Part shown: one piece after another, positions 3,715 to 49,511 of the stretch
Layout: each line of letters opens with the position of its first letter
Numbering within the stretch: the first letter of the stretch is position 1
Assembly (NCBI RefSeq): GCF_000315625.1
Contig: NW_005434584.1
Location: 62,001 to 126,000, forward strand
Reading direction: 5' to 3'
Origin: Guillardia theta CCMP2712
Lineage: Eukaryota; Protista; Cryptophyta
Length of the DNA: 64,000 nucleotides
Program-made: the position numbers and the translations under genes
The notes under the pieces: model-generated
What the model was told of the DNA's origin: nothing
What the model saw: only the letters and a program-made list of their open reading frames with translations
Database searches by the model: none

Positions 3715-6700
3715 ATGTCGCAGGTGAGGATGCTGTGTGCTTGTGAGAAGAATGCATCTGACATATCTTAATGTTCATGCAGATGTCGGTGTGGCTGTTT
3801 CTAGCGTGTTGTTGTTCGGTAGCTGTACATGCCGATCGACAATCATTCACGGTTGGGTCAACCACCACGGTTGGAACCATCGCCGAGATGGCTCAGCTGC
3901 ACTTCGACTACGGCGTGAAGGATCTCAAGGCGACCAACTTCAAGATCTACTGGGGTCAGCTTGGAAACACCCTGACCAAGACCAAGCAGACCAGCATTCT
4001 GTCTCCTGGGCATGTGGTCGAGGTTTACATGCCCGGCTTCACCGGAGGGTCGAACTTCTTCGGTGCATCTCGTGGAAGCACTCCGAGCACTGAGAGCACG
4101 ATCAGCTGGATGTCGCAGCAGAACAGCATTGTGATCTCTCAGTCTGTACAAGAGCCCTGGCAACAAGCCATCTCGAGCGACCTGTCACTGTCTGTGAGTG
4201 GCCCAGGAGCAGTTGGATGCATGGGAATCGTAGGCGATGTGTCATCCAACGAAGTGGGCATGTATCTCAACTATGACACATCATCCAAGCAGAACGGTCT
4301 GGGTCCTCTGCCGCCTCTCGGAGGCATCAACGAGGAGTGGCATCAGATGGCCTTCGTGTCTGTCTACGAGAAGCCCGCAACCACATCGTCTGACTGCAGT
4401 GGAGTGAGTCTTTCCGCCTTCGCCAGTACCACCTGCAGCACAGCAAACCTCGTGTACCAAGTACCGTTTGACAAGTACAAGTCACAACGCTTCGGCTCAG
4501 ACAGGCCAAGACTTCCGGTGAGGAAGGAGGCTGGAGCTATCGGAGTGACCAAGAACCCCACGTTTGTGTATGCTGCTGCTGCAGGGAACACAGACGGTAT
4601 CAACCAAGCCGTGTGCATCACTGTGACGATTGTGCCATCCATGACCATCTACTCTTCCCCTACTGCATCAACGCCTACAACCTTTACTATATCCGGGTTG
4701 ACAGGGTCTGGAACACCCGATCAAGTCACGTCATTGTATCAAAACAAATGTCAATGTGAAGGCAATCAAGAGGGGCTGTTTCCAACGAGATTCCAATCCA
4801 TCAGTTACGGTAATCAACTTGGCAAAGGAGACTTTGTTCAAGCAGCGGGAAGCTTGACTTTCCAACTTCTTCCTGGCATGTACATTCAAGCAGGCGAGGT
4901 TGTCATCTTCTCGTTTCAGCTGAAGACGCCAGGCACTGTTTCAGCGGCATCGAAGTCCATTTCGATCTCGATGTCGGGCAAGTATTGTCAGATCTCCGAT
5001 TTCTGTACAGGAGCAACTGGACAGTCCATTACACTTGGTCCTGTTACGTTCAACCCATCAACTAAGATTCTCCAAGCAGTCGGGAACAAGATTCGGGCAA
5101 CTATGTTCCAGAGCTCCTCAGATACTGGCTCTTTATCAAACATGTTTGTGACTTTGGTCCCGAACTTCGACATCCAGACATCTTCCATCCTCACCTTCAC
5201 TGGTCTGTGTGGGACCCAGGAGTTTGGAACTAAGGTAAACATGGTGGGTAACAGGTTTGCTGGGGGCAATCCTTTGACTAGCAAGTGCTCAACCTCTTCG
5301 TTTCCTACCGAGACTGACATTGGAGATCCAAGTCTCGGATACACTGGTCCAACGATGGACTGGAGCCAGTCGTCTGGAACATTGAAGTTGACCTTGACAA
5401 AGGCTCTGGCAGCAGAAGGTACCTATGCCTTCGCATGGAGCTGGAGGGTATCAGACAAGGAGAACTCCGCCTGTACCATGACAGTGTCATTGACTACTGG
5501 CCCGAACCTGGTTCAGAATGAGGCTGTCACGAACCTCGGAGGATCAGTGGGGCTGGTGGAGAAGCCATCTTTCATCAAGTACAGGATCGGACAAGTTACA
5601 ACTCGACCTGACGTCACCAACTACATCTGTGTAACCTTGAAGACCAACTTCAACCTTCAGACGTATCTGAATGCTGGCCAGTACAATGAGGCATCCATTA
5701 CTTTGTCAGGCTTATCAGGAAGCCAAGCTCAGGAAAACTCCAACCCTGACATTGACCACTGTCCATCCTTTGATTGGAACGCTCATTCGCTTGTAACTCC
5801 ATCACAAGCCTCCACTGCGTATTTTACCAGTGCAGTCACAGCCGGATCACCGAACAAAGTTGCAAAATTTGCTGCTGGAGTAGCCAAACTTGTCTTGAAT
5901 CCGGCTCAGAATCTTCCTGCAAATCACGAGATCAAGTTTGCGATCCCGCTGAAGAACTCCAAGGTTGCCCAGCCATGTCAAACAGTCACTCTGACCTTCA
6001 ATGCCTTGTATCAGAGTCAAAACAGCCAGGTGTCTTATGCAGCCACACAGACAGTACAGATGGTTGTGTCTCCTGTGAATCGTGCCCTGCAAGATGGAGA
6101 GATGGACGGAGATGCCTGTCCCTTGAAGGTCTACGACAAGGGCTTCTTGACCCGGTTGATCACCCAGCAGACGCCTCTGATCCAAGAGAACAACGTACTG
6201 ACCATTTCTCTCCGCTCGAATGTTGATCTTGGTTTGAATGGGTACGGTGCAACCATCACCATTGCAGGCTTGACGGGAACAGACACCACGCAGACATCTC
6301 TGACTGCACTATCACCGGCGTCAACAGACTACTACTCTCCGATCATTCAGAAGACTGAGTGGTCTCAGTCGAACGGTCAGATGATCATTCACCTTCCTTC
6401 ATCTTCCACTTGTCAGATGCCCATCAAGGGAACAACGACCAACTGTATGATGGCTGGCTGGACTTATGTGCTTCAATATGCCTTTGTGAATAGTCAAACC
6501 CAGCAGTCCAACCCCGCTGTATCTATCTCCGCGTCGTTTGCGGACGATGAACAGACCAAATCGCAGACGGCAACTCTTCCGCTGTCAAGTTACAAACATC
6601 CATTGTTTTTGACGAGCAACCTGCTCAACAAGTACGAGATCGGCCAGTTGTATCCAGCGCCAGGTGCAGTCAATCCTGTATGTGTCACCCTCAGACCAAA

Positions 6701-9700
6701 CAAGAACATTGTCAAACAGACTAAGTTTACTTTGACTGGACTGCCGATGTTTACCTCCACGTCCACAGTTGACTTCTACGATGAATATGGAATCCATCCT
6801 CTATCAAGCACTTCACTGAGGGGCTACTTCACCACAATTTCTGGTAACAACATCGCAGACAAAGCAGACTACGACAATGGTAACGGACAGATTCAGTTTC
6901 AATTTGTGACCAAGACATTGATTCTCGGAACGAAGTACAAGTTCTGCTTCCGTATGATCAATCAGAACTCTGCCTACAAGAACGGGGGCTCCTGTCCGTC
7001 AGTGTCGTTGATTGTTAGCTCCAGCGACGCTCCGAGTGCAGCGCCTGGTGTACAGACGTACACCATGAAGCAAGATGATGTGAAGAGGGTCTATGGGTAT
7101 GAGTCAGAGCCGTCAAGCTGCGCTGGCTACATCGTGAATCCTTCGTTTCCGCTTGCGACCATTCGATCTAGCTCCAATGTCACCTCAAACACTGTATGGA
7201 TGACTGTGGAATTGCAACCCAACTATGCATTGACAACAAGTCAGGCCGTAACAGTCGCTTCACTCACTGGGTTCATCGCCTCGCCTGATACGTTTACCTG
7301 CTGGATCAGCAGGAATGGCGAGTATGTCAACGTAGCTGCAAATGATGTGAGTGGAAACATTCATGCAAGCGACTTTGAATCAACATGCACCTTCAAGCAG
7401 AACGAGTTCAAGATGACTTACCAGCAATCACCCAATCTGCCTGTCTACAACCCTTACTTCAATGTAAACGCGATGAGATCGAACGGCATCTACGAGATAG
7501 TGGTGTTATCAGGCGGGTCAGGCTACACTGAGACCCCTACGGTTGTGATTTGTGGGTCTGAGTTCTACTTGAGCTCCACTTGCACTGCAAACAATGTGAT
7601 GTATGGAGTGGGACAGGGAGCGACAGCCACTGCAACGATCTCGGGTGGAGCGGTCACTGCGATCACCATCACCGACCCTGGACATGGATACTCTATCACT
7701 CCTGTGGTCATCGTCATACCTGCAGCAACCGAGACCGCAACTGTGACTGCAGCTAAGGCGCAGGCTTATCTGTACGACAGGAGCATCTACACCGTTCAGT
7801 TTCAGATTCAGAATCCAAGCGCAGAGCAGTCCGCACTCGCGTTGTCGATCCAAGCAACATTCAACTTTCCATCACAGGCTATAGTATCTGGAACACAGAC
7901 AAACGGATTGCAGATGATAGCATCGTCTTCGGATGTCGTCTTGAACATTGTTCCGCAGGTCCGCTTGTTTGCAGGAGACTCCCTGCTTGTGAACCTTCCA
8001 GCATACGAAGTCGAAGAGTCTGGACCTCTGTTTGGAGTTCAGTCCTCGAACCCGGCGTTCACCACCTTCACCTCACAGTTAGAATGGGAGTTGTTTGGCA
8101 GCTCCGAAGATAAGGCGAGGGCGTATCTGTCCAAGGGGTATGTTGCTGACGGCAACACGCATCGCTCTGGGGATGCAGACGTGGACGGAGTGTTTGTGTT
8201 GTCACCGTCTGATGACGGCTACAAGAAGAACAAGGACCTCTGCTGGAGCCACAAGCAGTGCCCTTGGGGAGCGTCAGACTATGATGTTGGGGATCAGGCA
8301 TCCTACACGCTGTCGAAGGTTCAGTTTGCAGGACCAAGTCCTCTTGGATACACCCACGAGGCTTGTTACACCGCTTCTGTGTCAGCATCACAATCCGATT
8401 ACGTCGGCATGCAGATCTCTTGCAGAAACAACGCCTTCTCAGCATCGACAACACCTGGGTCCTCTGTGACCGCAATCAAGGTCAAGTTTGCAGGACTCTA
8501 TGAAGTGACTGCACAGGCATCTGCTCAGACAGTAACCATCTCTCAATCAGATGCCGGATCTGGAAGCTCTGCCTCAGCTTCAATCTCTTATCAGGTGGCA
8601 AGGCTCTCTCTCCATACAGGGGACTTGGCAAACTGCCAGAGCATTACATTCTCTGCCACCGCTGGAACTCAGTTAATTGCAGCGAAGGCTGAAGTTGTTA
8701 TGTCTATTGTTGCATCTACCACAGACGTTCGCTACAGGATTGACATCACTAATCCCGGGTTGTACACGACCTTTCCAACTGCGACATGTACAGGAGCCAA
8801 CGCTCCAACTATCAAGCTCGAAATGTCCGTTGCAACAGTCAGTGTCACCAGCCAGGGGAGTGGATACGTCTCTATCCCATCCGTTATCTTGTCGGCCGCC
8901 CCTACTGGTGTCACTGTGACGTCTGCACCAGTGTTCGAAGTGATCATGTCTTCGGCAAACCAGAATATTATCACACAAACAATCCTCGATTACAACCCGT
9001 ACTACTCGCCGACCCCTTGCTTTCTTGTGGGGCAGGAGTTCCCATCGTCTTTCTTGAGCGACTGTAGCATCAACGTGAAGGAGAACGTTGGCCAATACAC
9101 AGGAATGACCGCCATGATCGGGTCCAAGGAGTACTTGATCAAGCAGGGAGCAGGAGGCGTGTACTGGGTGGTCGACTCGAACGGCAACAAGCCACGGAAC
9201 GTTGACATAGCCAACAAGCCCTACACCATCTACACCCAGTTGGAGCTGATCGTTGCCAAGAGCGCGAGGGTGGAGCCTGGCGAGTCTGTGTCGATCACCA
9301 TACCTGGGTACAGGTTCAAGTCTTATCCCAAGGACGTCAATGCTTACATCACTCCATCTACCGACGACGCTTCCAACACGACGAGGTACTACTTTGCAAC
9401 CACGCTGCCGGTCAAGAGCTCGTACGTGAAGGGATACGGAGTGTCGGGGATGGTCATAACCGGCGGAACGCTCGCAGGAGACTGCAGCATCAAGTACGTG
9501 GAGGGTCCTCAGAGCATGGGAGGAAACAAGCCGGAGGTTCGCTTCATCTCCGGTACCACCTCCAAGTTTGAGATCACTTACGCGGGAAGCGGATACACAA
9601 CCCCGCCGAGGTTCATCGGTCAGTGTGTGACCAGCACGGGGACGACGAGCTACTTCAACGGAGTCTTCTTGTTGTCGGGAAATTCAGGTGTACGACGAGT

Positions 9701-12700
9701 TGAGGTTGCAGTACAAGGAAACAACTGCCCCTCAGGAACTACTGTAACTATTGAAACTCCCAATCCTTCGGGATCGTATATTGATGGCTTGACGGGATTG
9801 ACTTACGTGGGGCAGCAGGCTTCAGCCATCGTCTTGCTGAATGGAAACAGCGTGTCTCAAGTAGTCCTACAGAACGCGGGAAGTGGGTACATCTCAGCTC
9901 CTTTGGTCACATTTCCTGCCACATGCAACGCACAGGCAAATGCATACATTTCACAGAACTTCTCGTCTACCATTGCGATGCGGTATGAGACAGGAAACTC
10001 CTTCTTGTACGAATGGAACAGGGACCAGACTGACACTCTGACGGGACTTTACGCTTCTGAGTTCTCTTCTGTTTCCATGTTTTCCCTTGAAACAGCGGCT
10101 AGTGGCTCAGCAGAGATCAAGTCCGGCTACGTTGTGTCGATTGCCGTGACAAATGCTGGGAGCACGTGCAACAATCCGAAAGTTACCGTGGACACTCCGG
10201 CAGGAATGTCGAGCACAGCGCAAGCTCAGGCGGAACCAAAAACAATAAACAACGTGTTGCAGTCAATCAACGTGACATACTCGGGGTATGGATACACTTC
10301 AGCCCCTTCAGTCACCATCACAGGTTGTGGAAGCGCATCAGCAGAAGCTTTCTTGAGCTACTCGAATGTCGATGTTCTAGTTGGGGGATCAACTTCATAT
10401 TCCAGCTTCAGAGGGGTGAGCCCCTATCAGGTGACCCAATCTTCTTCAAACTCGTACAAGACTGTCAACCCGGTCACGTCAGCCATGGACTCTCCGGTCT
10501 TGGTAGGTTTCAACGAAGCCTGCTCGAATGGGCAGACTGAAGCATACACATGGGAACAGTCTACCTACATGAACTCTCGGGTGACTGGAGTAACCATCAC
10601 CAGCGCAGGAGCAGGATACACCTTCAAAGGAACCAATGTGACCTTCACTGCATCTCCACTTGGTACCTCCAACATGTACGCGACCGCCAAGGGTGTACCG
10701 ACATGGTCGTTTCCTCCAAGGACAACTGCGACTGGGGCTGTAATTACCTTGAATACCAACGTCCTGTTGTACAAGGGGGGCACTTTGTCCACAGCAACAG
10801 GATGCGACAACGTCGTTTTGTTGTTCTCCTATCCTGAAAGATTAGGAGGAACGCAGCTACAGATCAAGATCACAAGTGTTGCATTCAAGACTTCACAGAT
10901 CAACCAGCAGGGATCAGGGTATGCTTCAATCCCTTATGTGTACGACATCCTCTTCAGTGACGGAAGGTACTTCCTCAAGGATGGGTACACTGGTGCTACC
11001 GGAAACTGCATCCCGCAGTACTTTGCGATTGATATGACTCGGCTGACTAATCTCGCATCGGGCGTTGGGTTGGTCATCGACGGCGTGTACATGACTCAGG
11101 GGGGATACGGGTACGACACTGCTCCCACTGTTACATTTGACTGCAAGTCCTGCACCATCACCACACAGGCCGTGGCCACAGCTACTCTTGAGAGCGGATG
11201 CTTCAATGGTCAGTGCACTCAGCCATCCTACGCCAACGCCTTCTTCTCGCCTGTCAACAGAAAGAACATTCAAGTCTGCCAGGCGAGCAACCCAGCTTCT
11301 AATGACTACCGTACACGAAAGACGCTCCAGATGCGAGTTTCCTCTGGACAGTCAGCAATCCAGTACTCATCGTCCACTGCATACGCGGCGAAGCGAAACA
11401 GAGGCTTCATGGCATCTGCAGGATCATTGAACTTCTACATCTCTACGCAGAACCTGCTGTCTGCCACGTGCACACCTCCTCAAGTTGTCGTGGAGCCTCC
11501 GACGTCCAGGTCGGGTGTCGCCGCACACGTCGAGCTCGTCGTAGAGAGTGCGAGGGTTGACAGCTACCTCTCTCAGAGTCCATCCTCAGCCGCTGATCTT
11601 CCGGCACAGGCCGCACAGTACAAGCTTGCCATCCGAACCGTGAACCCAGGCTCCGGGTACATCACAGCCCCAAGAGTCTCGTTTGTGAGCGTCGGAAGCA
11701 CTCCCTGCTCGACCACAGGCCTGACTGTTGCAGCAGCGCTTCAAGGCGGAATGTCTGTCTCCACTGTGCGGATTGCTGAATATCCATCCTACATCTGCCC
11801 AGCGCAGACTTACTACCTCAATCCTACAACCAAGACCTTGACAACTACTCAGAGTCAGGGTGCTGCGGTGATCACTTGGGATCGCAAGTCCAATGCTCCT
11901 TATGTGGTCGACGGGGGCTACGGGTACTCGTTTGGATCTCAGCCTCTTGTTCTCTCATGGGCGTCGTGTGGATCCACCACAGTGGTTATCTTCTTCGAAG
12001 ACACCAAGTCGATTGACGGTCAAGGACCTTTCCCTTCATTCTGGCCAGGTGACATGTCTGTGGATCAATCTGTCTGGAGAAATCATGCAGGAGAGGTCAC
12101 GGGTGTCGATCTCCTGTATGAGTCAAGGCACTTCTTTTCAAACCCTACTGTTCCTACCCCGCAGACATTCTTAAACGTCAACATCGCTGCTCGAAGCTTG
12201 AAACAAGCCGGTTTGATCTCAGCGAAATCTAATGACCTCAGGGCGACCACCAACATTGAATTGCCAGTGGAGGATGCGTCTCCCTTCAAGGCCAACGACT
12301 TGATTTTGATTGACAGTGAGATCTTCAAGGTTGGAACGGTAACTGGAAACACTATCACTGTGACCGAGAGAGCTCTAGGCGGTTCTGCAAGAGAAGCACA
12401 TTCGCCTGGAGCTAGTGTCGTGTTGTTCTATCCTGGAACCGCACTTGAGAAAGCTTTACCTGCATCTGTTGCAGGCGTGCTTGAGACGGTTTATGTAGCA
12501 TCAGCAGTTGGGTTTGCAGTGGAGAGCTCGATTGCGATCAATGATGAGTTCATGCTTGTGGCAGGCGTTGATGCAGCGACCAATACGCTGAGTGTGCACA
12601 GAGGATACACGCAGGCAGATGGTACAAAGACGCCTGCACATTCCGCTGCTTCACTTGTGGGGCTGTACAACCCGTTGGCTGCAGTTGCTAGAACACAAGC

Positions 12701-15700
12701 ATCCATCACTGCAACGGCAACCACGCTGTCTGTTTTTGTGACCAGGGGCTTTACAGCGAATACATACATCCAGATTGACAACGAGATCATGTTGATTACT
12801 ACCTTGGGATCCAAATCGTTTACTGTTCTCCGTGCTCAGGCTTATACTCAAGCAGCTTCACATGCTAAAGGGGCAGAGTATAGAGCTGTGAATGTCGAGA
12901 CCATAACTCTCTTACCAACAGCTCTTAGCACCCAACTTTCAAGCACTGCAACCTCAATGACGGTGAGCTCTTCCGTTGGATTGAAGGTTGGCGAGTACAT
13001 GGAGTTGCATTCTGACGCATCAAGCATTCGGCTTGTGAACTGCCGTCAAGACGGATGCTGCCGTGTGGAAGTTAAGCACGAAGGATCGTGGGGCACGGTG
13101 TGCGACGACAGTTTCACAGACACTAACGCACAAGTAGTTTGCCGGCAATTGGGATGCCCGACGGAAGGAGCAATGCAGGTACAGAGCTTCGGAGGAGGAA
13201 GCGGACCAATCTGGATGGACGACGTGTCATGCAGCGGAAGCGAGGCAGCGCTGCCGCTTTGCACCTTTAGAGGCTGGGGCAGCCACAACTGCGGCCACAG
13301 CGAAGACGTCGGCGTGTGCTGCCAGGGAGGCTGCACAGCACGTGGAACTGAATTGGTGAATGTCACATCCATCTCCGGCAACACGATCGGTATCAAGAGA
13401 GGGTTGTTCGGAACATCTGCAACCGATTGGCCTGTCCACACCGTAGCATCAGTTGCAACCGATGCACTTCAGTTGTCTGCCTCACTCAACAGTGAAAACG
13501 CATCAATCCCCACAGATACAACAGCATTGGGTCTGCAAATCGATGACTATCTACTCGTGAACAACGAAATTTTGGGTGTATCCAACTTCACAAAAAGTTC
13601 AATTCAAGTGACACGAGGTCAACAAGGTTCTACGACACAAACTCATGACGCAGTTTACGTCCAGAAGGCTTATGGCCCTACAACAGTAAACTCTTCAATC
13701 CTGACATTGTCGGCAGACATCACAGACAATGCAACCTCCATTGAGACTGCAGGATACTCAGTTCTGACAGCAGGAACTTACATTCAGATAGAAGACGAAG
13801 TCCTCTATGTGAGGAATGCTCCCACGTCCAGTGTTGTGGCTGTTGAGTCCGCGAACATCACCAATCGCTCCTCGCATGCTGCAGATCAAGTGATCTACAT
13901 TGTCAGCAACCCCACTTACATCAGGTCAAGCATCGATCATGTAACCACAACAATTCCTGTTCAATCAATCACAGGCTTCTCCTCTGGACAGTACGTTAGG
14001 GTGGAATCCGAGCTCATGCTGGTCAACAGTGTAATTACTTCTTCTAACTCACTCAATGTGACAAGGGCTTTAATCCCAGAACCACACAATGCAGGAAAAG
14101 TCTTGTCTGTATATGATTCGATCTATGTGAACGATCAGCTTCAGATTGTGCCAGGAGACTTTGTGGTAGTTAACAACGAGATTGACTATGTGATTGCATC
14201 TTCTTCAAAGCTGCTGACCATTAAGCCAGGACAGTTCGGAAGTGTTCCCAAGATCCCTTCTTCAAGCGATGTTGTAACAGTTGCGTCTAGAACAGGGCTG
14301 AAGAATGCTATCCTGTTAGCTGCAATTATGTTCAATGCTACATCGATGATTGTCAACGATGCAACGGGGTTGTTCTTAAATGACGTTGTCGCGATTGGAC
14401 AGGAAAGAGTGCAGATCAAGTCTCTTTCAAACAACCTTGTGGGTGTCATTCGAGGAGTCCAGGGAACGTTTGCTGCTAATCATGCGGAAGGCACATCGGT
14501 GAACTTTATTGAGCAATCAACAACTGTCCTTGCTTCCACTTGGACTCAGACCTCTCGGCGCAGGCTGCTACAGTCTTTGTCAGCAGGCATCAGTGCGGCT
14601 GCTACGTCACTTACTGTATCAGGAACGCTGCCGGCCCAAGGAACGAACATTCTTGTTGAACACGAGAATATGTTAGTGCTGACTGTCGATAAAGCGGCTA
14701 AAACCATCACCGCATCCAGAGGAAAGCAGGGCACCACAGTAATCGCACACAACGCGAGTGCCGAGATTGTGCTATCGATTGGGGCACAGTTCTTCATCGA
14801 GACCATCATCACGGCGACAGGCGTGCTTCAGTCCATCTCAGGCAGCAACTCTGGTTTGTACGCACGTCCGATCATCACCAACCCCGACACAGCTGATGCT
14901 ACCCCGATGTTGTACCTCGATAGCATTGCAGTAATTAACAGCCCCACAAAACTTCAGAAGGCCCCTGTGCTCTCCCTCAACTACCTCGCGCCTGCCTTGA
15001 CTGCTTATACCGGGGTGAACCCGGACCTGATCGTTCCTTCCCTGTCATATCCTGTGATCTACAACCCGGCCAAGTACAGCACCGACCCGCTCTACTACCA
15101 GGACAGGATGGACGGATACGACTTGATGCGTCCAAACTCGCCTGTTCTTGAGAGCAGCTCCAACCGCATCAACGGAACAAGCCCGGTCTACGTCCTCGAC
15201 TCTTTTGGACAGATGCTGGGCGATCACGTGGTTGGCAGTGAGAGCATTGCCGTGACCCTGCAGGCTCTGACCTCAGCTATCTCCACAAACCCCGTGTTAT
15301 CCTCGACTGCTTCGTCGTCTTTGACAACCAAGGCATCGTACAAGGTGACTCAACAGTCTTCTAGCCTGGGCAGCGTGTGGGGCCCTCCTTCCAAGGTCTA
15401 CTCGCCTTTCTTGGGCTACTCCATCAAGTCAGTGGCGGCATCTGGGGTGCAGTCACCAGCCACGCTCAAAGTTGCCTTGACTTCAGCGACAGCAACGTCC
15501 TTGGAACTCTCAGCAGCTGTCGCTTACATCACGGTAAACAGCTTCATCAGAATCGACAACGAGGTCATGAAGGTCACAGCAGTCTCTGGGGTCATTCTCA
15601 CGGTGGTGCGTGGTCAGCGATACACCTACGCGACAACTCACAATCAAGACGCAGAGGTATACTCGGATTGTGTTGGACGTTTGTACGCCGAGCCAAGCCT

Positions 15701-16310
15701 CGAGGGAGGGGAGCCTGCCGTCCTGGACTTTGACGGAACCACCATCACCGTGGTCTCAGGAGGAAGCGGATATCTGTCGTCCGCTAAGATCCATGCATGC
15801 GGCAGTTCAACAAGGTGCAACTATACTATCGCGACTGAGAACACCTGCTCTTTGACCTTCACTTCCACTCTCGGCTCTGCCGTGAGCGAGATGTATCTCA
15901 ATGAGACTGTAGCTACTCGGGCGCTTGGAGGACAGCTCACTGGTCTGACATCCTCGAGCAGCAGGTTCGTCTTGCAGAAGACGCAGTCAAGAAAAGTTTC
16001 TTTGGTATTGCCAACCTCTACGCCGGGAGGACCTGTCACAACAACTACCACCACACCATCATCAAGCTCTACGAATGTCGGTGCCATCATCGGAGGAGTG
16101 GTGGGAGGAGTGGTCGGAGCTGCCTTCCTTGCATTCATGGCATACAAGTTTCTGGCCCCGGCTGCTGTAGCTAAGCCTCCACTTGAGGAGATGGTTCCTG
16201 TATACCTCCCACAGACCTATCCCGTTCTCCCTGTCGACTACGCCTCTGCTGCTCCCATGCCCGTCCAGACGCCTCTCTACGGTCAGCAGCCGATGGCGTA
16301 TGGAATGTAG
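3715..16310 (+). CDS. Giant (~4180 aa) type-I membrane surface protein, copy 1: signal peptide, repeated beta-rich modules, GSGY repeats, ID.E/RG..GT..H repeats, SRCR domain, TM helix, Pro/Tyr-rich tail
   Basis: 12.5-kb uninterrupted ORF 3771-16310. Probable 9-nt first exon ATGTCGCAG (3715-3723) and intron 3724-3782 (gtgagg...ctgac...tgcag). N-terminus MSVWLFLACCCSVAVHA is signal-like; TM GAIIGGVVGGVVGAAFLAFMAY at about 16080-16146. Confidence 0.9.
13026..13323 (+). other. Scavenger receptor cysteine-rich (SRCR) domain within giant gene 1
   Basis: IRLV...RVEVKHEGSWGTVCDDSF...AQVVCRQLGC...FGGGSGPIWMDDVSCSGSEAALPLC...WGSHNCGHSEDVGVCC matches the canonical SRCR consensus. Confidence 0.97.
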
Positions 16311-23354: not shown

Positions 23355-23413
23355 TATTGTCCTATTCGGATCAGGAGGTTTGATGAGAGTTTGGTTTCAT
23401 GTGATATTACAAG

Positions 23414-25195: not shown

Positions 25196-28100
25196 TCAAG
25201 TCATCTCGTCTACCTGCACCTTGACTCGCCCTCGGTACCTCACGAACTTGTGAGTCAAGAACCCCAGCAGCCCTGCTCCTATCACCCCTCCTACCGCACA
25301 ACCCACTACTACCCCGACGTTACTCGCGCTCGCTGCTTGCAATGGAATTTCAGACGCTGCTTTTCCAGTTCCAGCTGGTGTTGTTGTGACATCCGCCGCA
25401 TGGATAAAAGAGCTGGTGGTAGGAGATGGAGTTGTCTCCAAAGCCTCCACAACGGTGGAGCTGTTGGAGGAGTTGGAAGTGTTTGATGCAGCAGACGACA
25501 CGACCATTGAAACTTTGCTCGGCCGGGTCTTCCACAAGAAGAATCGACTGCTGGATGAAGTGAGGCCGGTCATTTGCCCTCCAAGAGCTCTCGTAGCTAC
25601 CGTATGGTTCAGATACACCTCAGTCACAGCGGGCCCGAGACTGGCAGTGAAGGTCAGCGAGCAGGTGTTGACCTGAGCTCCAGCATAGTCACATCTCGTA
25701 ACACTCCCGCAGGCGTACACATGTGAGCTTGATAAGTATCCGCTGCCTCCCGATACCACCGTCACCGAGGTCCCACTGAAGTCGAGGATAGCCGGCTCTC
25801 CTCCCTCCAGGCTCGGCTCGGCATAGAGTCGACCGATGCAGTCTGAGTACACGTTGGCGTTCGTAGCGTGAGTGGTTGCGTAGGTTGACCGCTGAGCGCG
25901 GACAATCGTGAGGGTATTTCCAGTGACAGCCGAGACCTTCATCACCTCATTGTCAATGCGGATGAAGCTGTTTACCGTGATGTAAGCGACAGCCGCTGTC
26001 AGAGATACAGTGACTGTGGTGGTGTCAATCTGTGCTGAGAGCGTGGCTGGTGACTGCACCCCAGATGCCGCCACTGACTTGATGGAGTAGCCCAAGAAAG
26101 GCGAGTAGACCTTGGAAGGAGCCCCCCACACGCTGCCCAGGCTAGAAGACTGTTGAGTCACCTTGTACGATGCCTTGGTTGTCAAGGTCGACGAAGCAGT
26201 CGAGGATAACACGGGGTTTGTGGAGATAGCTGAGGTCCGAGCCTGCAGGGTCACGGCAATGCTCTCACTACCAACCACGTGATCGCCCAGCATCTGTCCA
26301 AAAGAGTCGAGGATGTAGACCGGGCTTGTTCCGTTGATGCGGTTGGAGCTGCTCTCAAGAACAGGCGAGTTTGGACGCATCAAGTCATATCCGTCCATCC
26401 TGTCCTGGTAGTAGAGCGGGTCGGTGCTGTACTTGGCCGGGTTGTAGATGACAGGGTAGGACAGTGAAGAAACGATCAGGTCCTGGTTCACTCCAAAGGG
26501 GGTGAGGGCAGGCGCGAGGTAGTTGAGGGAGAGCACAGGGGCCTTCTGAAGCTTGGATGGGCTGCTGATCACTGCGATGCCATCGAGGTACAACATCGGG
26601 GTAGCATCAGTAGTGCCGGGGTTGGTGATGAGAGGACGTGCGTACAAGCCAGAGTTGCTGCCTGAGATGGACTGAAGCACGCCAGTCGCCCCGATGATGG
26701 TCTCACTCAGGTACTGAGCGCTGATCGACAGCACAATCTCCGCATTCGCATTGTGCGCGGCAGCCGTGGTACCTTGTTGGCCCCTGGAGACAGTGATGGT
26801 GCTTGCAGACTTGTTGAGAGACAAAACGTATATCACCTCCTGCTCCACGAGGATGTTCGTGCCCTGCGCTGGCAGCGTTCCTGTCTTGCCCGCATTCGGT
26901 CCCATCGATATCAACGTGTCAGAGATCGAGAGGTCAGTATTCAAGGCAATGGGCAGCAGGGAGACTGTCTCGACGCTCACGGCCGTGTACTCGGCCCCAG
27001 ACGCGTGCGATGCTGCCTGAGTGTAAGCCTGAGCGCGGAGAATGGTGAACGAGCCCGTGTTCAAGGCAGTGATCAGCATGATCTCGTTGCCAATCTGAAT
27101 GTAAGTGTTGGCCGTGAAGCCTCTGGTGGTGAAGACCGGGAGAGTCGTGGCGGTGGCTGTGATGGAGGCCGAGGTCTTGGCTACTGCAGCCTTGGGGTTG
27201 AAGAGTCCCACCAGGGCTGCTGCTGGATGTGACGGAGTCTCGGTTCCCTCCGCCTGTGTGTATCCTCTGTACACGCTCAGAGTGTTGGCGGTCGTGTCAA
27301 CGCTCGCTACCAGCATGAACTCGTCATCGACTGCAACGGATTCGTCCACGGCAAACCCGCTTGCCGATGCCACATAGATCGTCTCTACCGTACCCGCAAC
27401 TGACGTCAGGACAGCCTTCTCGAGTGCCGTACCAGGAAAGAACAAGACGACACTCGCTCCGGGAAAGTGTTGCGACTGGCTGGTACCTCCAAGCGCTCTT
27501 TCGCTCACAGTGATCGTGTTGCCGGTCACCGTTCCAATCTTGAAGATCTCGCTATCAATCAAGATCAAATCTCCTGCCTTGAAAGAGGAGGCGTCCTCCA
27601 CGGCGAATGAGATACTGGCTGCTGCCCGCACATCGTTAGATCTCGATGAGAACAAGCCAGCCTGCTTCAGGCTTCGAGCCGCGATGTTCACGTTCAAGAA
27701 GGTCTGAGGCGTCGGTACCGTCGGGTTGGAATAGAAGTGCTTAGACTCGTACATGAAGTCAACGCCCGTGATCTCTCCCGCATGATTCCTCCAGGTAGAC
27801 TGATCCACCGACATGTCTCCCGGCCAGAACGACGGGTACGGCGCAAGGCCGTCCAGGGACTTGCTGTCCTCGAAGAAGATCACCACTGTAGTCGCCCCGC
27901 ACGATGCCCACGAGAGAGTCACAGGCTGGGTGCCGTACGAGTACCCGTAGCCGCCGTCAACCACGTATGGGGCATTGGCCTTACGATCCCAGGTGATGGT
28001 CGCAGCCCCCTGAGTCTGAGTGGTGGAGAGAGTCATGGTAGTGGGGTTGAGGTAATACGTCTGTGCTGGGCAGATGTACAACGGAGCAGCAGCTGTCTGC

Positions 28101-31100
28101 ACAGTCGAGACTGACATGCCTCCCTGCAGTTCCGCTGCGACCACCAGGCCAGTCGTAGAGCATGGGGTGCTCCCAACGCTCACAAAGGAGACAGTGGGAG
28201 CAGTGATGTATCCCGAGCCCGGGTTGACAGTGCGGACAGCAAGCTTGTACTGTGCGGCCTGTGCCGGAAGATCAGCGGCTGTGGCTGGACTCTGAGAGAG
28301 ATAGCTGTCTGCCCTCGTGCTCTCGACGACAAGCTCGACCTGTGCGGCGACACCCGACATGGACGTCGGAGGCTCTACGACTACCTGAGGTGGTGTGCAC
28401 ATGGCTGACAGGAGGTTCTGAGATGAGACGTAGAAGTTCAGCGATCCAGTCGATGCCATGAAGCCTCGGTTCCTTCTCGCCGCGTACGCCGTCGACGACG
28501 AGTACTGGATGCCAGACTGACCCGAGGATACACGCATCTGAAGCGTCTTGCGCGTGCGGTAGTCGTTGGCTCCCGGGTTGGTCGCTTGGCAGACCTGGAG
28601 GTTGTTTCTGTTGACAGGAGAGAAGAAGGCGTTGGCGTAGGATGGCTGAGTGCACTGACCATTGAAGCATCCGCTCTCGAGAGTAGCTGTGGCCACGGCC
28701 TGTGAGGTGATGGTGCAGGACTTGCAGTCAAATGTAACAGTGGGAGCAGTGTCGTACCCGTATCCCCCCTGAGTCATGTACACGCCGTCGATGACCAACC
28801 CAACGCCCGATGCGAGATTGGTGAGCCGAGTGACGTCGATTGCAAAGTACTGGGGAACGCAGTTCCCGTTGGTGCCCGTGTATCCATCCTTCAAGAAGGT
28901 TTGGCCATTGTTGGAGTTGAACTTGATGTCGTACACGTACGGGATCGAGGCATAGCCCGTTCCTTGCTGAATGACCTGAGAGGTCCTCGATGCGGCGCTG
29001 TTGATCTGGATCTGAAGCTGTGCTCCTCCGGCCCTCTCGGGGTAGGAGAACATCAAGACGATGTTGTCGCACCCGGTCGCTGTCGACAGGGCAGCCCCCT
29101 TGTACAGCAAGACGTTCGTGTTCAGGTTTGTAGTGCCCCCAGAGGAGGTGGTTGTAGGAGGGAACGACCACGTCGGTACACCCTTGGCGGTCGCGTACAT
29201 GTTGGAGGAGCCCAGCGGCGAGGCAGAGAAGGTCACGGTGGTGCCTTTGAAGGTGTATCCTGCTCCAGCGCTTGACATGGTCACTCCGGTGACACGCGAG
29301 TTCTTGTAGGTAGACTGCTCTCGCTGATATGCCTCGGTCTTACCATTGGAGCAGGCTTCGTTGAATCCGACCAGCACCGGGGAGTCCATGGCTGACGTGA
29401 CCGGGTTGACAGTCTTGTACGAGTTGGCAGACGACTGCGTCACTTGGAGTGGTCGCATTCCTCTGTAGCTAGAGAACGAGGTTGATCCCCCCACAAGCAC
29501 ATCCACGTTCGAGTAGCTCAAGAAGGCCTTTGCAGTCGCAGCCCCGCAACCTGTGATGGTCACCGATGGTGCTGACGTGTATCCATACCCTCCGTATGTC
29601 ACGTTGATGGATTGCAGGATGTTGGCCGCTGTGACAGGTACTGCCTTCGCTTGCGCAGCTGCTGACACCCCGGACGCGGACACGGTGATCGTCGGGCTCG
29701 TGCAGGTTGTACCAGACTTGGTAATGGCAATCGATGCCACGTAACCAGAGTTCATCTCGGCTGACCCGCTCGCCGCCGTCTCGAGAGAAAACAAGGAGAC
29801 AGACGAGAACTCAGACGAGTACAGGCCCGTCAAGGTGTCAGTCTGCTCTCTGTTCCATTCATACAAGAAGGTGTTGCCTGTTTCGTACCTCATCGCAATG
29901 CTCGACGAGAAGTTCTGGGAGATGTACGCCTGCGCCTGAGCATTGCACGTAGCCGGAAAAGTAACCAAAGGAGCTGATATGTATCCGCTACCTCCGTTCT
30001 GGAGTACCACCTGAGACACGCTGTTTCCATTCAGCAACACAATGGCTGAGGCTTGCTGGCCTGCATAGGTCAACCCCGTCAGGCCATCAATGTATGATCC
30101 GGATGGGTTCGGAGACTCGATATTGACAGTGGTTCCTGAGGGGCAGTTGTTTCCTTGTACTGCAACCTCAACGCGTCGTACGCCTGAATTTCCCGACAAC
30201 AAGAAGACTCCGTTGAAGTAGGTCGTCGTCCCCGTGCTGGTCACACACTGACCGATGAAGCGAGGAGGAGACGTGTATCCGCTCCCCGCGTAAGTGATCT
30301 CAAACTTGGACGTGGCCCCAGAGATAAATCGTACCTCCGGCTTGTTTCCTCCCATGCTCTGAGGACCATCCACATACTTGATGCTGCAGTCTCCTGCGAG
30401 CGTTCCGCCGGTTATGACCATCCCCGTCACTCCGTATCCCTTCACGTACGAGCTCTTGACCGGCAGCGTGGTTGCAAAGTAGTACCTCGTCCTCTCCGCG
30501 ATAGTCTTGGAAGCGTCGTCGGTGGATCGAGTGATGTAAGCATTGACGTTCTTGGGATAGGACTTGAACCTGTACCCAGGTATGGTGATCGACACAGACT
30601 CGCCAGGCTCCACCCTCGCGCTCTTGGCAACGATCAGCTCCAACTGGGTGTAGATGGTGTAGGGCTTGTTGGCTATGTCGACGTTCCGTGGCTTGTTGCC
30701 GTTCGAGTCGACCACCCAGTACACGCCTCCTGCTCCCTGCTTGATCAAGTACTCGTTGGACCCGATCATGGCGGTCATTCCTGTGTATCGGCCAACGTTC
30801 TCCTTCACATGGATGCTACAGTCGCTCAAGAAAGACGATGGGAACTCCTGCCCCACAAGGAAGCAAGGGGTCGGCGAGTAGTACGGGTTGTAATCGAGTA
30901 TCGTCTGGGTGATAATATTCTGGTTGGCCGTAGACATGATCACTTCAAACACTGGTGCTGTCGTCTGAGTAACCCCAGTAGGCGCGGCCGACAAGAACAC
31001 TGATGGGATGGTCACGTACCCGCTGCCCTGGCTGGTTACGCTGACTGTGGCTACCGACATGAACAGGTTGAGGGTGGGGGGGGTGGTTCCAGTACAAGTT

Positions 31101-34100: not shown

Positions 34101-36302
34101 TTCCAGTCGTAAGATGGGCAGTTGTCAATGTCCGGGTTGGAGTTGTCCTGCGCCTGGCTGCCTGACAGGCCGGACAGGGTGATGGTTGCTTCATTGTACT
34201 GGCCTGCATTCAAGTATGTTTGAAGGTTGAAGTTGGTCTTCAGAGTCACACAGATGTAGTTTGTCACGTCCGGTCGAGTGGTAACCTGTCCGATCTTGTA
34301 CTTGGTAAACGACGGCTTCTCAACAAGACCCACTGATCCTCCGAGGTTCGTGACAGCCTCATTCTGAACCTGGTTCGGCCCAGTCGTCAACGACACTGTC
34401 ATCGTACAGGCCGAGTTCTCCCTATCCGATACCCTCCAGCTCCACGCGAAGGCATAGTCACCTCGCGCGGCCAGAGCCTGGGTCAGGGTCAGCTTCAGGG
34501 TCCCTGACGACTGGCTCCAGTCCATCGTCGACCCGGTGTATCCAAAACTTGGATCTCCAATGTCAACCTCCGTCGGATAAGACGAGCTGGAGCACTTGTC
34601 CGTCAAAGGATTGCCTCCAGCAAACCTGTTACCCACCATGTTTACCTTGGTACCAGACTCCTGAGTCCCGCACAGACCAGTGAAGGTCAAGATGGAAGAA
34701 GTCTGGATATCGAAGTTGGGAGACAGAGTCACAAACATGTTCGACAAGGAGCCTGTGTCAGACGAGCTCTGGAACATCCTTGCCCCGATCTTGTTTCCGA
34801 CCGCCTGGAGAATCTTCGTCGAGGGACTGAAAGTGATCGGGTTGAGCGTGATGGACTGTCCGGTAGATCCCGTGCAGAAGTCAGAGATCTGGCAATACTT
34901 GCCCGACATCGAGATAGAGATGGGCTTCGATGCTGCTGACACTGTTCCCGGTGTCTTCAGCTGAAACGAGAAGATGACAACCTCTCCTGCTTGAATGTAC
35001 ATGCCTGGCAAGAGCTGAAAGGTCAAGGTGCCCGCCCCTTGGACAAAGTCGGCTTTTCCAATCTGGTTTCCGTAGCTGATAGACTGGAACATGCTTGGGA
35101 AGAGCCCTGCTTGAGTGCTTTCACATTGACATTTGTTCTGATACAAGGCTGTCACTTGATCTGGTGTACTAGACCCTGTCAACCCGGAGATCGTCAAAGT
35201 TGTGGGAGTAGATGATGTCGGAGACGAGTAGATGGTCATGGATGGTACGATCGTAACAGTGATGCACACGGCTTGGTTGATACCGTCTGTGTTCCCTGCA
35301 GCGGCAGCATACACGAACGTGGGGTTCTTGGTCACTCCGATAGCTCCAGCCTCCTTCCTCACCGGAAGTCTTGGCCTGTCTGAGCCGAAGCGTTGTGACT
35401 TGTACTTGTCAAACGGTACTTGGTACACGAGGTTTGCTGTGCTGCAGGTGGTACTGGCAAAGGCGGAAAGACTCACTCCGGTGCAGTCAGACGATGTGGT
35501 TGCAGGCTTCTCGTAGACAGACACGAAGGCCATCTGATGCCACTCCTCGTTGATGCCTCCGAGAGGCGGCAGAGGTCCCAGACCGTTCTGCTTGGATGAT
35601 GTGTCATAGTTGAGATACATGCTCACTTTGCTGATGAAGACTCCTGTCACGGTGCTAGGCGCATTGCTGCTCAGCCTCAGACGCAGCATCTCTCGCTGAG
35701 CGTTCCACTCACAGTAGTCAAACACATTCGCCCGGAGCTGCTTCAGGTCGAAAGCGTTCGATGACACATCGCCTACGATTCCCATGCATCCAACTGCTCC
35801 TGGGCCACTCACAGACAGTGACAGGTCGCTCGAGATGGCTTGTTGCCAGGGCTCCTGTACAGACTGAGAGATCACAATGCTGTTCTGCTGCGACATCCAG
35901 CTGATCGTGCTCTCAGTGCTCTCAGTGCTTCCACGTGATGCACCGAAGAAGTTCGACCCTCCGGTGAAGCCGGGCATGTAAACTTCGACCACATGCCCAG
36001 GAGACAGAATGCTGGTCTGCTTGGACTTGGTCAGGGTGTTTCCAAGCTGACCCCAGTAGATCTTGAAGTTGGTCGCCTTGAGATCCTTCACGCCATGGTC
36101 GAAGTGGAGTTGAGCCATCTCGGCTATGGTTCCAACCGTGGTGGTTGATCCGACAGTGAATGTTTGCCGATCGGCATGTACAGCTACCGAGCAGCAAGCA
36201 AGAAGCAGCCATACCGACATCTGCATCTGTCAGCAGTGATGTCACTTGCGAACAAGCATCGATCATCAACTTTCTCACCCTCACCTGCATCATGCCTTGC
36301 AT
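25196..36302 (-). CDS. Giant (~3680 aa) type-I membrane surface protein, copy 2 (paralog of 3715-16310, lacking the SRCR block)
   Basis: 11-kb ORF 25196-36226 collinear with copy 1. Short first exon (start at 36302 or 36293) and intron 36284-36221 at the same position as in copy 1. TM VGVVVGCAVGGVIGAGLLGFL; short basic tail. Confidence 0.9.
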
Positions 36303-49390: not shown

Positions 49391-49511
49391 GGAATTGAGA
49401 ACTGCCTCTTCTCTTTTCCTAATATTATTCTGAGGCGGATTTATTTTTCTACATGGCTTTCCCTGAGTGACTTGTTGGGCGGTAGAAACCTACTTGTTGG
49501 TAGAGAGCTCG

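What the first reader, a model, noticed from the sequence alone, without database searches (positions are those of the whole stretch)
7500..15790. Phage-structural-protein-like repeats inside a eukaryotic membrane protein
Seen: about 13 G[SYAH]GY..xP.V motifs (e.g. GGSGYTETPTV...GATATATISGGAVTAITITDPGHGY) and about 11 units of (Y/F)I.ID.E.M.V....T(L)TV.RG..GT.A..H..GA in copy 1, versus 5 such units in copy 2. From recall, both repeat types are typical of baseplate/tail and other virion proteins of marine T4-like phages. Inference: phage-type structural modules have been combined with a signal peptide, TM anchor and SRCR domain to make a large surface fibre or adhesin. It could act in bacterial capture or as a cell-covering component.
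Basis: partly seen in the sequence, partly recalled or inferred. Interest (0 to 1): 0.8.

Follow-up and report, generated by a model that had tools for sequence, protein, structure and literature searches.

The report
Cryptophyte giant surface protein, phage modules
A marine alga (Guillardia theta) encodes a family of 4,000-residue membrane-anchored surface proteins built largely from two small modules otherwise found on the tails, baseplates and necks of marine cyanophages and in giant bacterial adhesins. This shows virus/bacterial surface building blocks re-used in a eukaryotic cell coat.

Summary
The finding lies inside one uninterrupted ORF (window 3771-16310, +, 4179 aa) of Guillardia theta CCMP2712. 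It has a signal peptide, a single C-terminal TM helix and a short cytoplasmic tail.

- **GxGY module:** 12 strict G[SYAH]GY motifs, against 0.3 expected by shuffling.
- **Second module:** 11 units of about 65 aa (I.ID.E.m.V...ltV.RG..GT.a..H). One unit is split by a nested SRCR domain. The paralogue at 25196-36226 (-) has 5 units.

Both modules are homologous to phage virion modules, not compositional look-alikes.
- **PHROG matches:** tail, baseplate-wedge, neck and virion-structural families match at down to 4e-23.
- **Phage record search:** all 21 named phage records hit by tblastn are marine cyanomyoviruses.
- **Direct HMM test:** HMMs built only from the alga hit the P-RSM6 tail sheath (7.6e-20), the 6405-aa S-RIM50 gp7-like protein (at least 18 units) and S-SKS1 gp14.
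- **Structure:** predicted folds match cyanophage proteins.

The 65-aa module also occurs in giant bacterial RTX adhesins, so "phage-type" is too narrow and the donor is unresolved.

The genome holds at least 147 and at least 79 copies of the two modules, in at least 15 giant genes. The two copies here are under purifying selection (dN/dS 0.11).

My best reading is a glycosylated surface-coat or adhesive fibre. Function is inferred, not shown, and I obtained no expression data. The scan reached the same reading on a paralogue in this genome (s1-439557).

The parts
3771..16310 (+). Gene 1: uninterrupted ORF of 4179 aa, a giant type-I membrane protein of Guillardia theta
   Evidence: ORF list and translation. 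Paralogues are named GUITHDRAFT_*. dN/dS against copy 2 is 0.11.
3771..3833 (+). Signal peptide (MFMQMSVWLFLACCCSVAVHA|D)
   Evidence: Hydrophobic segment at aa 1-19. The cleavage site is read from the sequence and is an inference.
4368..7427 (+). N-terminal region with six repeats of about 170 aa, each marked by a (I/V)T(I/L)xGLTG motif. Not phage-like.
   Evidence: Motifs at aa 305, 474, 643, 829, 986 and 1160. No Pfam or PHROG hit. Relatives occur in ENA and in marine eukaryote metatranscriptome proteins.
7428..11951 (+). GxGY module region: 11 units at aa 1220-1260, 1277-1314, 1667-1706, 1913-1949, 2008-2048, 2146-2183, 2251-2290, 2352-2392, 2417-2456, 2598-2638 and 2687-2725. Many are the second half of two-half beta domains of about 90-100 aa.
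   Evidence: HMM delimitation. PHROG 460, 701, 2885, 438, 708 and others. AF2 model with Foldseek hits to cyanophage virion proteins. HMM hits on S-RIM50 gp7-like and S-SKS1 gp14.
12261..12902 (+). Three tandem 65-aa beta-barrel units (aa 2831-3044)
   Evidence: HMM. PHROG 9851, 11439, 4406 and 1101. tblastn hits only in cyanomyoviruses. PDB profile hits 8vjh and 8rk3.
12939..13424 (+). One 65-aa unit split by a nested domain (N half aa 3057-3077, C half aa 3193-3218)
   Evidence: HMM positions 1-21 and 25-50 flank the insertion.
13062..13325 (+). SRCR domain (aa 3098-3185) inserted in a hairpin of the split unit
   Evidence: Pfam PF00530, E 1e-24, 87 bits against a cut-off of 26. The own-genome search places it at the same coordinates.
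13491..14774 (+). Six more 65-aa units (aa 3241-3668). Most of this block is absent from copy 2.
   Evidence: HMM. PHROG 1101 at 2e-20, plus 7578 and 4406. Copy 1 against copy 2 alignment.
15483..15677 (+). Last 65-aa unit (aa 3905-3969)
   Evidence: HMM, E 2e-27. PHROG 11439.
15681..15797 (+). Last GxGY unit (aa 3971-4009)
   Evidence: HMM, E 3e-11.
16074..16145 (+). Transmembrane helix (aa 4102-4125), preceded by a Thr/Ser/Pro-rich stalk
   Evidence: Kyte-Doolittle peak of 2.23, the only internal hydrophobic segment.
16146..16307 (+). Pro/Tyr-rich cytoplasmic tail of 54 aa, with YxxPhi-like motifs
   Evidence: Read from the translation. The motif reading is an inference.
25196..36226 (-). 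Gene 2 (copy 2, GUITHDRAFT_115981): a 3676-aa paralogue with 12 GxGY units, 5 units of 65 aa and no SRCR

Best explanation
This is a functional nuclear gene of the cryptophyte alga Guillardia theta. It is one of at least 15 giant, essentially intron-free paralogues. It encodes a type-I membrane glycoprotein whose ectodomain of about 4,080 aa is a long chain of small beta domains.

Domain order:
- six cryptophyte-type N-terminal repeats;
- about a dozen GxGY two-half beta-sandwich modules;
- eleven 65-aa beta-barrel modules.

The last two kinds were inherited, through horizontal transfer followed by massive internal duplication, from the pool of surface-decoration modules. T4-like cyanophages insert such modules into their sheath, baseplate-wedge, neck and fibre proteins, and marine bacteria use them in giant adhesins. 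After the acquisition, a eukaryotic SRCR ligand-binding domain was nested into a loop of one barrel.

Proposed mechanism (inferred):
- The protein is secreted through the ER, and probably heavily glycosylated by the neighbouring glycosyltransferases.
- It stays anchored by its C-terminal helix.
- It projects as a fibre of 100 nm or more that builds the fibrillar or knobbly outer coat (surface periplast / glycocalyx) of the cell.
- The phage-type modules act as rigid spacers and low-affinity glycan or ligand binders, as they are thought to do on virions.
For: Shown:
- Gene and topology: a single 12.5-kb ORF with a signal peptide and one TM helix.
- Organism and family: Guillardia theta paralogues. 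The genome holds at least 147 65-aa units and at least 79 GxGY units in open frames of 4,000-11,325 aa on more than 15 contigs.
- Selection: dN/dS of 0.11 at dS 0.74 between the two copies in the window, so both are maintained.
- Homology of the 65-aa unit: PHROG 4406, 1101, 11439 and 9851 at 4e-23 to 3e-13. PDB profile hits to the phage Chi tail tip 8vjh (6e-9) and the JBD30 gpJ-like 8rk3 (6e-5). tblastn hits 22 phage records; the 21 named ones are all marine cyanomyoviruses and one is an uncultured phage. The alga-only HMM hits the P-RSM6 tail sheath at 7.6e-20 and 1e-17. The AF2 barrel has its best PDB match in 8rk3_o at Z 6.6.
- Homology of GxGY: 15 PHROG families covering neck Hc2, baseplate wedge, virion structural and fibre proteins. 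The AF2 model gives 16 BFVD hits at E<=1e-3, mostly cyanophage virion proteins. ESM-atlas TM scores are 0.67-0.76 to T4 neck, gp53 and tailspike clusters. The alga-only HMM finds at least 18 units in the S-RIM50 gp7-like protein and 3 in S-SKS1 gp14. The S-RIM50 protein also carries one 65-aa unit.
- Bacterial occurrence: giant proteins in non-phage contexts.
- Other cryptophytes and marine eukaryote transcripts carry relatives.
- Neighbours are GT25, GT90 (two), GT61 and a PLOD-type GT.

From the literature:
- The cryptophyte surface periplast component self-assembles from a high-molecular-mass polypeptide (Perasso et al. 1997, as cited in PMC12223506 and PMC6212826).
- The Guillardia plasma membrane has a knobbly surface (PMC6212826).
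Against:
- The Komma caudata periplast polypeptide is described as secreted, whereas this protein has a TM anchor.
- The donor is unresolved. Unit identities to phage, bacterial and metagenomic units all saturate at 50-58%, and a unit tree does not make the cryptophyte units monophyletic.
- The function of these modules is not established even in phages.
- Both AF2 models are of moderate confidence (pLDDT 71-72).
- The GxGY model has no convincing match among solved structures (Z <= 4.2).
Confidence: 0.6

Rival explanations
1. Prey- or bacteria-capture adhesin. The phage-derived modules keep an affinity for cyanobacterial or bacterial envelopes. Together with SRCR, they let the alga bind Synechococcus or other bacteria, for mixotrophic uptake or for managing its phycosphere.
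For: - The closest named relatives are host-contacting parts of cyanophages that infect Synechococcus and Prochlorococcus, and bacterial adhesins.
- SRCR domains are classical pattern-binding domains (established knowledge).
Against: - In the phage proteins the modules are insertions in conserved core proteins (sheath, gp14, gp7). Pfam does not cover them, and no receptor-binding role has been shown for them.
- I have no evidence that G. theta ingests bacteria.
- SRCR is missing from copy 2 and from most paralogues.
Confidence: 0.2
2. Variable shield against viruses or grazers. A fast-diversifying family of bulky glycoproteins masks receptors or acts as a decoy, comparable to the glycosyltransferase-rich outlier chromosomes of prasinophytes.
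For: - The multigene family is large, with unit-number variation between recent paralogues (11 against 5 units, SRCR gain or loss).
- The genes cluster with several glycosyltransferases.
Against: - Purifying selection is strong (dN/dS 0.11) rather than diversifying.
- I have no population data and no known G. theta virus to test against.
Confidence: 0.12
3. The genes are not host genes. They would be bacterial or phage contamination, or part of an endogenous giant-virus or polinton-like element.
For: - The module kinship is with prokaryotes and viruses, and the ORFs are intron-free.
- Some BFVD hits are to giant-virus proteins (Sylvanvirus).
- Cryptophyte polinton-like viruses carry phage-like fibre proteins (PMC12220804).
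Against: - The genes lie on a 336-kb nuclear contig among eukaryote-type glycosyltransferases.
- The protein has eukaryotic membrane topology and a nested SRCR domain.
- Copies lie on more than 15 contigs.
- Relatives occur in other cryptophytes and in eukaryote metatranscriptomes.
- I found no NCLDV capsid match in the genome and no viral hallmark gene in the window. That capsid search also found nothing in its control genomes, so it does not show absence.
Confidence: 0.03
4. The resemblance is a compositional artefact of Gly/Ser/Thr-rich sequence.
For: The protein is 23% Ser+Thr. Several BLAST and word searches found nothing.
Against: - Bias-corrected HMMER E-values reach 1e-20 in both directions.
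- The conserved residues are not compositional ones (E, R, H, Y, P).
- The folds agree.
Confidence: 0.01

Closest known systems
Accessory modules of T4-like cyanophage (Kyanoviridae) virion proteins: gp7-like baseplate wedge initiator (S-RIM50 YP_009302175, 6405 aa), gp14 neck / head closure Hc2 (S-SKS1), gp18 tail sheath (P-RSM6), tail fibres (S-CAM1). PHROGs 460, 701, 2885, 438, 4406, 1101, 11439 and 9851.
   Same: Both module types match by sequence profile and by predicted fold. They also co-occur in one phage protein, as they do here.
   Different: - Here they sit in a eukaryotic nuclear gene with a signal peptide, TM anchor, cytoplasmic tail, SRCR and a non-phage N-terminal region.
- None of the conserved virion cores (sheath, neck, wedge domains) is present.
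Beta-barrel domains of siphophage tail-tip (gpJ-like) proteins: phage Chi 8vjh_A and Pseudomonas phage JBD30 8rk3_o
   Same: The 65-aa unit aligns to them at 6e-9 and 6e-5, with the I.ID.E...V...RG..T.pa.H signature. 8rk3_o is also the best structural match, at Z 6.6.
   Different: Those proteins carry one to three copies in a tail-tip protein. Here there are eleven tandem copies in a membrane protein.
Giant bacterial RTX/cadherin adhesins and other giant surface proteins of marine bacteria (P0174 in GCA_945861865.1, P0014, P0007 in GCA_964458015.1)
   Same: - Tandem arrays of 12-19 of the same 65-aa unit in proteins of 3,600-3,900 aa.
- A giant fibre-like surface architecture.
- Glycosyltransferase neighbours in one case.
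   Different: - The algal protein has no RTX (HemolysinCabind) or cadherin domains.
- The bacterial proteins lack GxGY modules and use type-I secretion rather than a signal peptide with a TM anchor.
Cryptophyte surface periplast component (high-molecular-mass polypeptide of Komma caudata, Perasso et al. 1997)
   Same: A very large cryptophyte cell-surface protein. This is a functional analogy only.
   Different: No sequence is available for comparison. It is described as secreted and self-assembling, not membrane-anchored.
Eukaryotic SRCR-containing surface receptors (Pfam PF00530)
   Same: A bona fide SRCR domain in an extracellular, membrane-anchored protein.
   Different: There is a single SRCR, nested inside a prokaryote/phage-type barrel. 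The rest of the architecture is unrelated to animal scavenger receptors.

Membership tests
65-aa beta-barrel module of phage tail/virion proteins (PHROG 4406/1101/11439/9851; PDB 8vjh, 8rk3) | Significant profile match with the conserved I.ID.E...V...(T)V.RG..GT.a..H signature | tested here: met
   PHROG at 4e-23 to 3e-13. PDB at 6e-9 and 6e-5. Reciprocal alga-only HMM against the P-RSM6 sheath at 7.6e-20.
65-aa beta-barrel module of phage tail/virion proteins (PHROG 4406/1101/11439/9851; PDB 8vjh, 8rk3) | Small all-beta barrel fold | tested here: inconclusive
   The AF2 model has pLDDT 71 and five strands. The best PDB match is 8rk3_o (Z 6.6, rmsd 3.6 over 69 residues). BFVD gives the S-WAM1 sheath at 36% identity and rmsd 2.1. 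Z is below 8 and the Foldseek E-values are above 0.01.
65-aa beta-barrel module of phage tail/virion proteins (PHROG 4406/1101/11439/9851; PDB 8vjh, 8rk3) | Host protein is a virion (tail/baseplate) component encoded in a phage genome | tested here: not met
   The gene is a eukaryotic nuclear gene with no virion core domains. The module also occurs in bacterial cellular proteins.
GxGY module of T4-like cyanophage virion proteins (PHROG 460/701/2885/438/708) | Profile match of the A.A.a.i..G.v..i.v...G.GY...P.V.i unit | tested here: met
   15 PHROG families, the best at 3.5e-14 and 4.4e-8. The alga-only HMM finds at least 18 units in S-RIM50 gp7-like and 3 in S-SKS1 gp14.
GxGY module of T4-like cyanophage virion proteins (PHROG 460/701/2885/438/708) | Same fold as the module in cyanophage proteins | tested here: met
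   The AF2 model (pLDDT 72) against BFVD gives 16 hits at E<=1e-3, for example P-TIM40 at TM 0.69 and rmsd 1.7 over 93 columns. ESM-atlas TM scores are 0.67-0.76. Both sides are predictions. No solved structure matches.
GxGY module of T4-like cyanophage virion proteins (PHROG 460/701/2885/438/708) | Embedded in a conserved virion core protein (gp7, gp14, gp6/8/53-like) | tested here: not met
   No T4_neck, Baseplate_wedge or sheath Pfam domains in the algal protein. They are present in the phage proteins.
SRCR superfamily (Pfam PF00530) | Match above Pfam gathering threshold over the whole domain | tested here: met
   87.2 bits against a cut-off of 26.1, covering profile positions 10-100 of 100.
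Bacterial RTX giant adhesins | RTX nonapeptide (HemolysinCabind) repeats and a type-I secretion C-terminus | tested here: not met
   No HemolysinCabind or cadherin hit in either copy. The C-terminus is a TM helix plus a tail.
Type-I single-pass membrane protein | N-terminal signal peptide and a single C-terminal TM helix | tested here: met
   Only two hydrophobic segments, aa 1-19 and aa 4102-4125. I ran no dedicated signal-peptide predictor.
Cryptophyte surface periplast component | Localisation in the layer outside the plasma membrane; self-assembly | not testable with these tools
   Rests on the literature analogy only (Perasso 1997, via PMC12223506 and PMC6212826).

The most novel reading that the evidence does not exclude
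Cryptophytes captured host-recognition or decoration modules of marine cyanophages, possibly by way of ingested infected Synechococcus. They then expanded them into a family of giant receptors that still recognise cyanobacterial or bacterial envelopes. A eukaryote would thus use virus-derived binding modules to catch prey or to organise its bacterial partners. These proteins would also be the long-sought molecular components of the cryptophyte surface periplast.
Probability: 0.12. Interest if true: 0.85.

Novelty: new variant of a known kind. Interest (0 to 1): 0.66.

Why it matters
- **Domain transfer:** It is a clear and statistically strong case of structural (not enzymatic) modules shared between phage virions, bacterial adhesins and a eukaryotic cell surface. 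After transfer the modules expanded to at least 150 copies in one alga.
- **Periplast candidates:** It gives concrete candidate genes for the molecularly unknown outer coat of cryptophytes.
- **Unannotated domain families:** It shows that two very widespread modules have no Pfam family even in the phages. The 65-aa barrel alone is in about 13,000 representative clusters. Defining them would improve annotation of cyanophage virion proteins, bacterial giant adhesins and these algal proteins alike.
- **Eukaryotic tinkering:** The SRCR domain nested inside a phage-type barrel shows that the acquired scaffold was modified afterwards.

Tried and rejected
Searches that gave nothing or failed:
- tblastn of the whole 841-aa repeat region against phages gave no hit. 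The shorter 3-unit query did work.
- tblastn of the GxGY pair gave no hit. The longer GxGY region gave only non-significant hits (E 0.03-1), though 34 of 40 were cyanophages.
- The word-based homologue search with aa 3230-3700 found nothing among 8000 candidates.
- PDB sequence search for GxGY gave only a sub-significant tailspike motif match (Dpo31, E 0.19) and spurious haemagglutinin hits.
- Structural search of PDB for GxGY gave only generic Ig-like sandwiches at Z <= 4.2.

Analyses that did not resolve the question:
- Donor inference from unit identities and a FastTree of 315 units. Cryptophyte units cluster more than random (17 label changes against about 30) but are not monophyletic, and support is weak. 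I rejected this as evidence for any donor.
- The giant-virus element idea. I found no NCLDV capsid match in the genome and no hallmark gene in the window, but the capsid search also found nothing in its control genomes, so it does not show absence.
- Contamination and compositional artefact are rejected (see the rival explanations).

Steps that could not be run:
- Two atlas calls failed on length. P0006 was too long for a context look-up.
Full report
**What is there**

The finding (window 7500-15790) lies inside one uninterrupted ORF, window 3771-16310 on the + strand, 4179 aa. A paralogue of 3676 aa lies at 25196-36226 on the - strand.

- The two copies align over aa 3-3070 at 86% identity, and again over the C-terminal ~470 aa.
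- Copy 1 has an extra block of about 540 aa.
- The window is contig C90:62001-126000 of an 87.1-Mb, 669-contig genome.
- A whole-length protein search returned only Guillardia theta CCMP2712 "hypothetical proteins" (GUITHDRAFT_115981, _120756, _120760, _101325), at 40-86% identity. The organism is therefore this marine cryptophyte alga.
- GUITHDRAFT_115981 is copy 2 from Met37 onwards, so the annotated model misses the signal peptide.
- No paper in the searchable library names these genes or links Guillardia with SRCR.

**Check of the observation**

- GxGY motifs: strict G[SYAH]GY occurs 12 times in each copy, in copy 1 at aa 1249-3998, nt 7515-15773. 2000 shuffles give a mean of 0.30 and a maximum of 4.
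- GxGY units: an iterated HMM delimits a unit of about 40 aa twelve times per copy. Aligning the surrounding sequence shows that many units are the second half of a two-half domain of about 90-100 aa, whose first half is often degenerate.
- Split unit: profile positions 1-21 lie at aa 3057-3077 and positions 25-50 at aa 3193-3218. A Pfam SRCR domain (E 1e-24, aa 3098-3185) is nested in the hairpin between them.
- Topology: hydropathy finds only a signal peptide (aa 1-19) and one TM helix (aa 4102-4125). The helix is preceded by a Thr/Ser/Pro stalk and followed by a 54-aa Pro/Tyr-rich tail.

**Are the repeats really phage-like? The 65-aa unit**

- Pfam and NCBIfam recognise nothing except SRCR.
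- PHROGs match the units to virion structural (4406, 4e-23), tail (1101, 2.4e-22) and tail fibre (11439, 9851) families.
- A profile of 15 algal units hits two solved structures. One is the tail-tip protein of phage Chi (8vjh_A, 6e-9; identified through PMC11945409). The other is the gpJ-like protein of the JBD30 baseplate (8rk3_o, 6e-5).
- tblastn of three units against 50,697 phage records hits 22 records. The 21 named ones are all marine Synechococcus/Prochlorococcus myoviruses and one is an uncultured phage. The hits fall in tail sheath, gp15 and tail fibre genes, with a best E of 8e-8.
- An HMM built only from the alga hits two tandem units inserted in the P-RSM6 gp18 sheath, at 7.6e-20 and 1e-17.
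- The AF2 model (pLDDT 71) is a small beta barrel. Its best PDB match is again 8rk3_o (Z 6.6). BFVD gives cyanophage sheath domains at 36-40% identity and about 2 A rmsd. These structural scores alone are not significant for so small a domain.

**Are the repeats really phage-like? The GxGY unit**

- The pair at aa 1220-1350 matches 15 PHROG families, covering neck / head closure Hc2, four baseplate-wedge families, virion structural, fibre and hub proteins.
- The AF2 model of the two-half domain (pLDDT 72, two pseudo-symmetric three-strand halves) gives 16 BFVD matches at E<=1e-3. They are dominated by T4-like cyanophage virion proteins: P-TIM40, P-RSM1, Bellamy gp7-like, S-ShM2, S-P4 and the S-RIM32 neck.
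- ESM-atlas TM scores are 0.67-0.76 to clusters carrying T4 neck, gp53 and tailspike domains.
- The alga-only HMM finds at least 18 units in the 6405-aa gp7-like "baseplate wedge initiator" of cyanophage S-RIM50, and three in gp14 of S-SKS1. The S-RIM50 protein also contains one 65-aa unit, so both modules co-occur in a phage protein.
- No solved structure resembles the GxGY domain beyond a generic Ig-like sandwich.
- Pfam covers only the conserved cores of these phage proteins and neither module. In the phages the modules are therefore unannotated accessory insertions.

**Not phage-only**

- The unit profile finds 13,095 representative clusters at E<=1e-3 among 1.84 billion proteins, and 1,471 at E<=1e-10.
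- Other cryptophytes are among the best hits: Rhodomonas salina and Hanusia phi.
- So are giant bacterial proteins in clearly cellular contexts. One is a 3652-aa protein next to glycosyltransferases. Others are RTX/cadherin adhesins of 3,800-3,860 aa with 14 units.
- A phage-like 119-kb contig is also among them.
- Best unit identities to algal units saturate at 50-58% for bacterial, phage and metagenomic sources alike. A unit tree does not resolve a donor.
- GxGY modules are absent from the bacterial giants sampled. The combination of both modules is so far shared only with cyanophage proteins and a few metagenomic proteins.

**The family and its status**

- The genome contains at least 147 65-aa units and at least 79 GxGY units. 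They lie in open frames of 4,000-11,325 aa on more than 15 contigs.
- Within the family, SRCR occurs only in this gene and in the copy upstream on the same contig.
- dN/dS between the two window copies is 0.11 at dS 0.74, so both are under purifying selection.
- The N-terminal 1,200 aa consist of six repeats of about 170 aa with a TIxGLTG motif, and have no phage or Pfam match. Their relatives are a signal-peptide-bearing ENA protein (30% identity over 95%) and marine eukaryote metatranscriptome proteins, one of which also carries the 65-aa unit.
- Neighbours in the window are GT25, two GT90, GT61, a PLOD-type GT and DUF3431 proteins.
- I found no NCLDV capsid match in the genome and no viral hallmark gene in the window. 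That capsid search also found nothing in its control genomes, so it does not show absence.

**Interpretation**

Shown:
- A real, selected eukaryotic gene encodes a giant type-I membrane protein.
- Two of its repeat types are homologous to accessory modules of cyanophage virion proteins. One of them is also homologous to modules of giant bacterial adhesins.
- An SRCR domain is nested inside one barrel.

Inferred:
- The modules were acquired horizontally and then duplicated.
- The protein is a glycosylated fibre of the cell's outer coat (surface periplast / glycocalyx), with the modules acting as spacers and weak binders.
- The cryptophyte surface periplast component is reported to assemble from a high-molecular-mass polypeptide (Perasso et al. 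1997, cited in PMC12223506 and PMC6212826). Guillardia has a knobbly plasma-membrane surface (PMC6212826). This is only an analogy.
- Bacterial capture and a variable anti-viral shield remain live alternatives.
- Contamination, a viral element and compositional artefact are rejected.

**Limits**

- The structures are moderate-confidence predictions.
- The donor is unresolved.
- The range of the family among eukaryotes beyond cryptophytes was not determined.

**Earlier notes of this scan**

Another agent reached the same reading on a paralogue 33 kb downstream (s1-439557). First-reader notes cover copy 2, the upstream copy and the glycosyltransferase cluster.

Noticed in passing
window 12939-13424 (SRCR at 13062-13325): The SRCR domain is nested inside one 65-aa barrel unit, between its second and third strands. 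This is a domain-in-domain insertion. The upstream paralogue (C90:48731-48997) shares it, and copy 2 lacks it.
   Followed up: partly
window 25196-36226 (-), 5' end: The public model GUITHDRAFT_115981 equals ORF residues 37-3662. It starts at an internal Met, lacks the signal peptide, and its last 13 residues differ from the ORF.
   Followed up: partly
window about 35630-35755 (-), aa 158-199 of copy 2: Copy 2 carries an in-frame extra segment of about 42 aa (AFDLKQLRANVFDYCEWNAQ...) that copy 1 lacks. It could be an insertion or a retained in-frame intron. The annotation keeps it as coding.
   Followed up: no
window 4368-7427: There are six N-terminal repeats of about 170 aa with a (I/V)T(I/L)xGLTG motif. 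They match no Pfam or PHROG family. Their relatives occur only in an ENA metagenome protein and in marine eukaryote metatranscriptome proteins.
   Followed up: partly
G000:C10:39000-83000 (outside the window): An open frame of 11,325 aa, plus a neighbouring one of 3,015 aa, carries dozens of 65-aa units. The genome therefore holds an even larger member of the module family.
   Followed up: no
window 18588-19802, 21389-24138, 48247-54376, 58854-60041: Intron-poor glycosyltransferase genes (GT25, GT90 twice, GT61, PLOD-type GT) and three DUF3431 ORFs cluster around the two giant genes. This is unusual for a eukaryote and consistent with a glycoprotein-coat locus.
   Followed up: partly
L001:2674-5472 (P-RSM6 gp18); L007:1634-3109 (S-SKS1 gp14); L008 (S-RIM50 gp7-like): Neither module has a Pfam family, even in the phage proteins. 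The 65-aa barrel alone occurs in about 13,000 representative clusters, so both modules are candidates for new domain families.
   Followed up: partly
P0131 (MGB1594120.1): A 475-aa partial protein on a 2.1-kb contig binned as 'Promethearchaeia archaeon' carries both modules, like the algal family. It may be a mis-binned eukaryotic or viral fragment.
   Followed up: no
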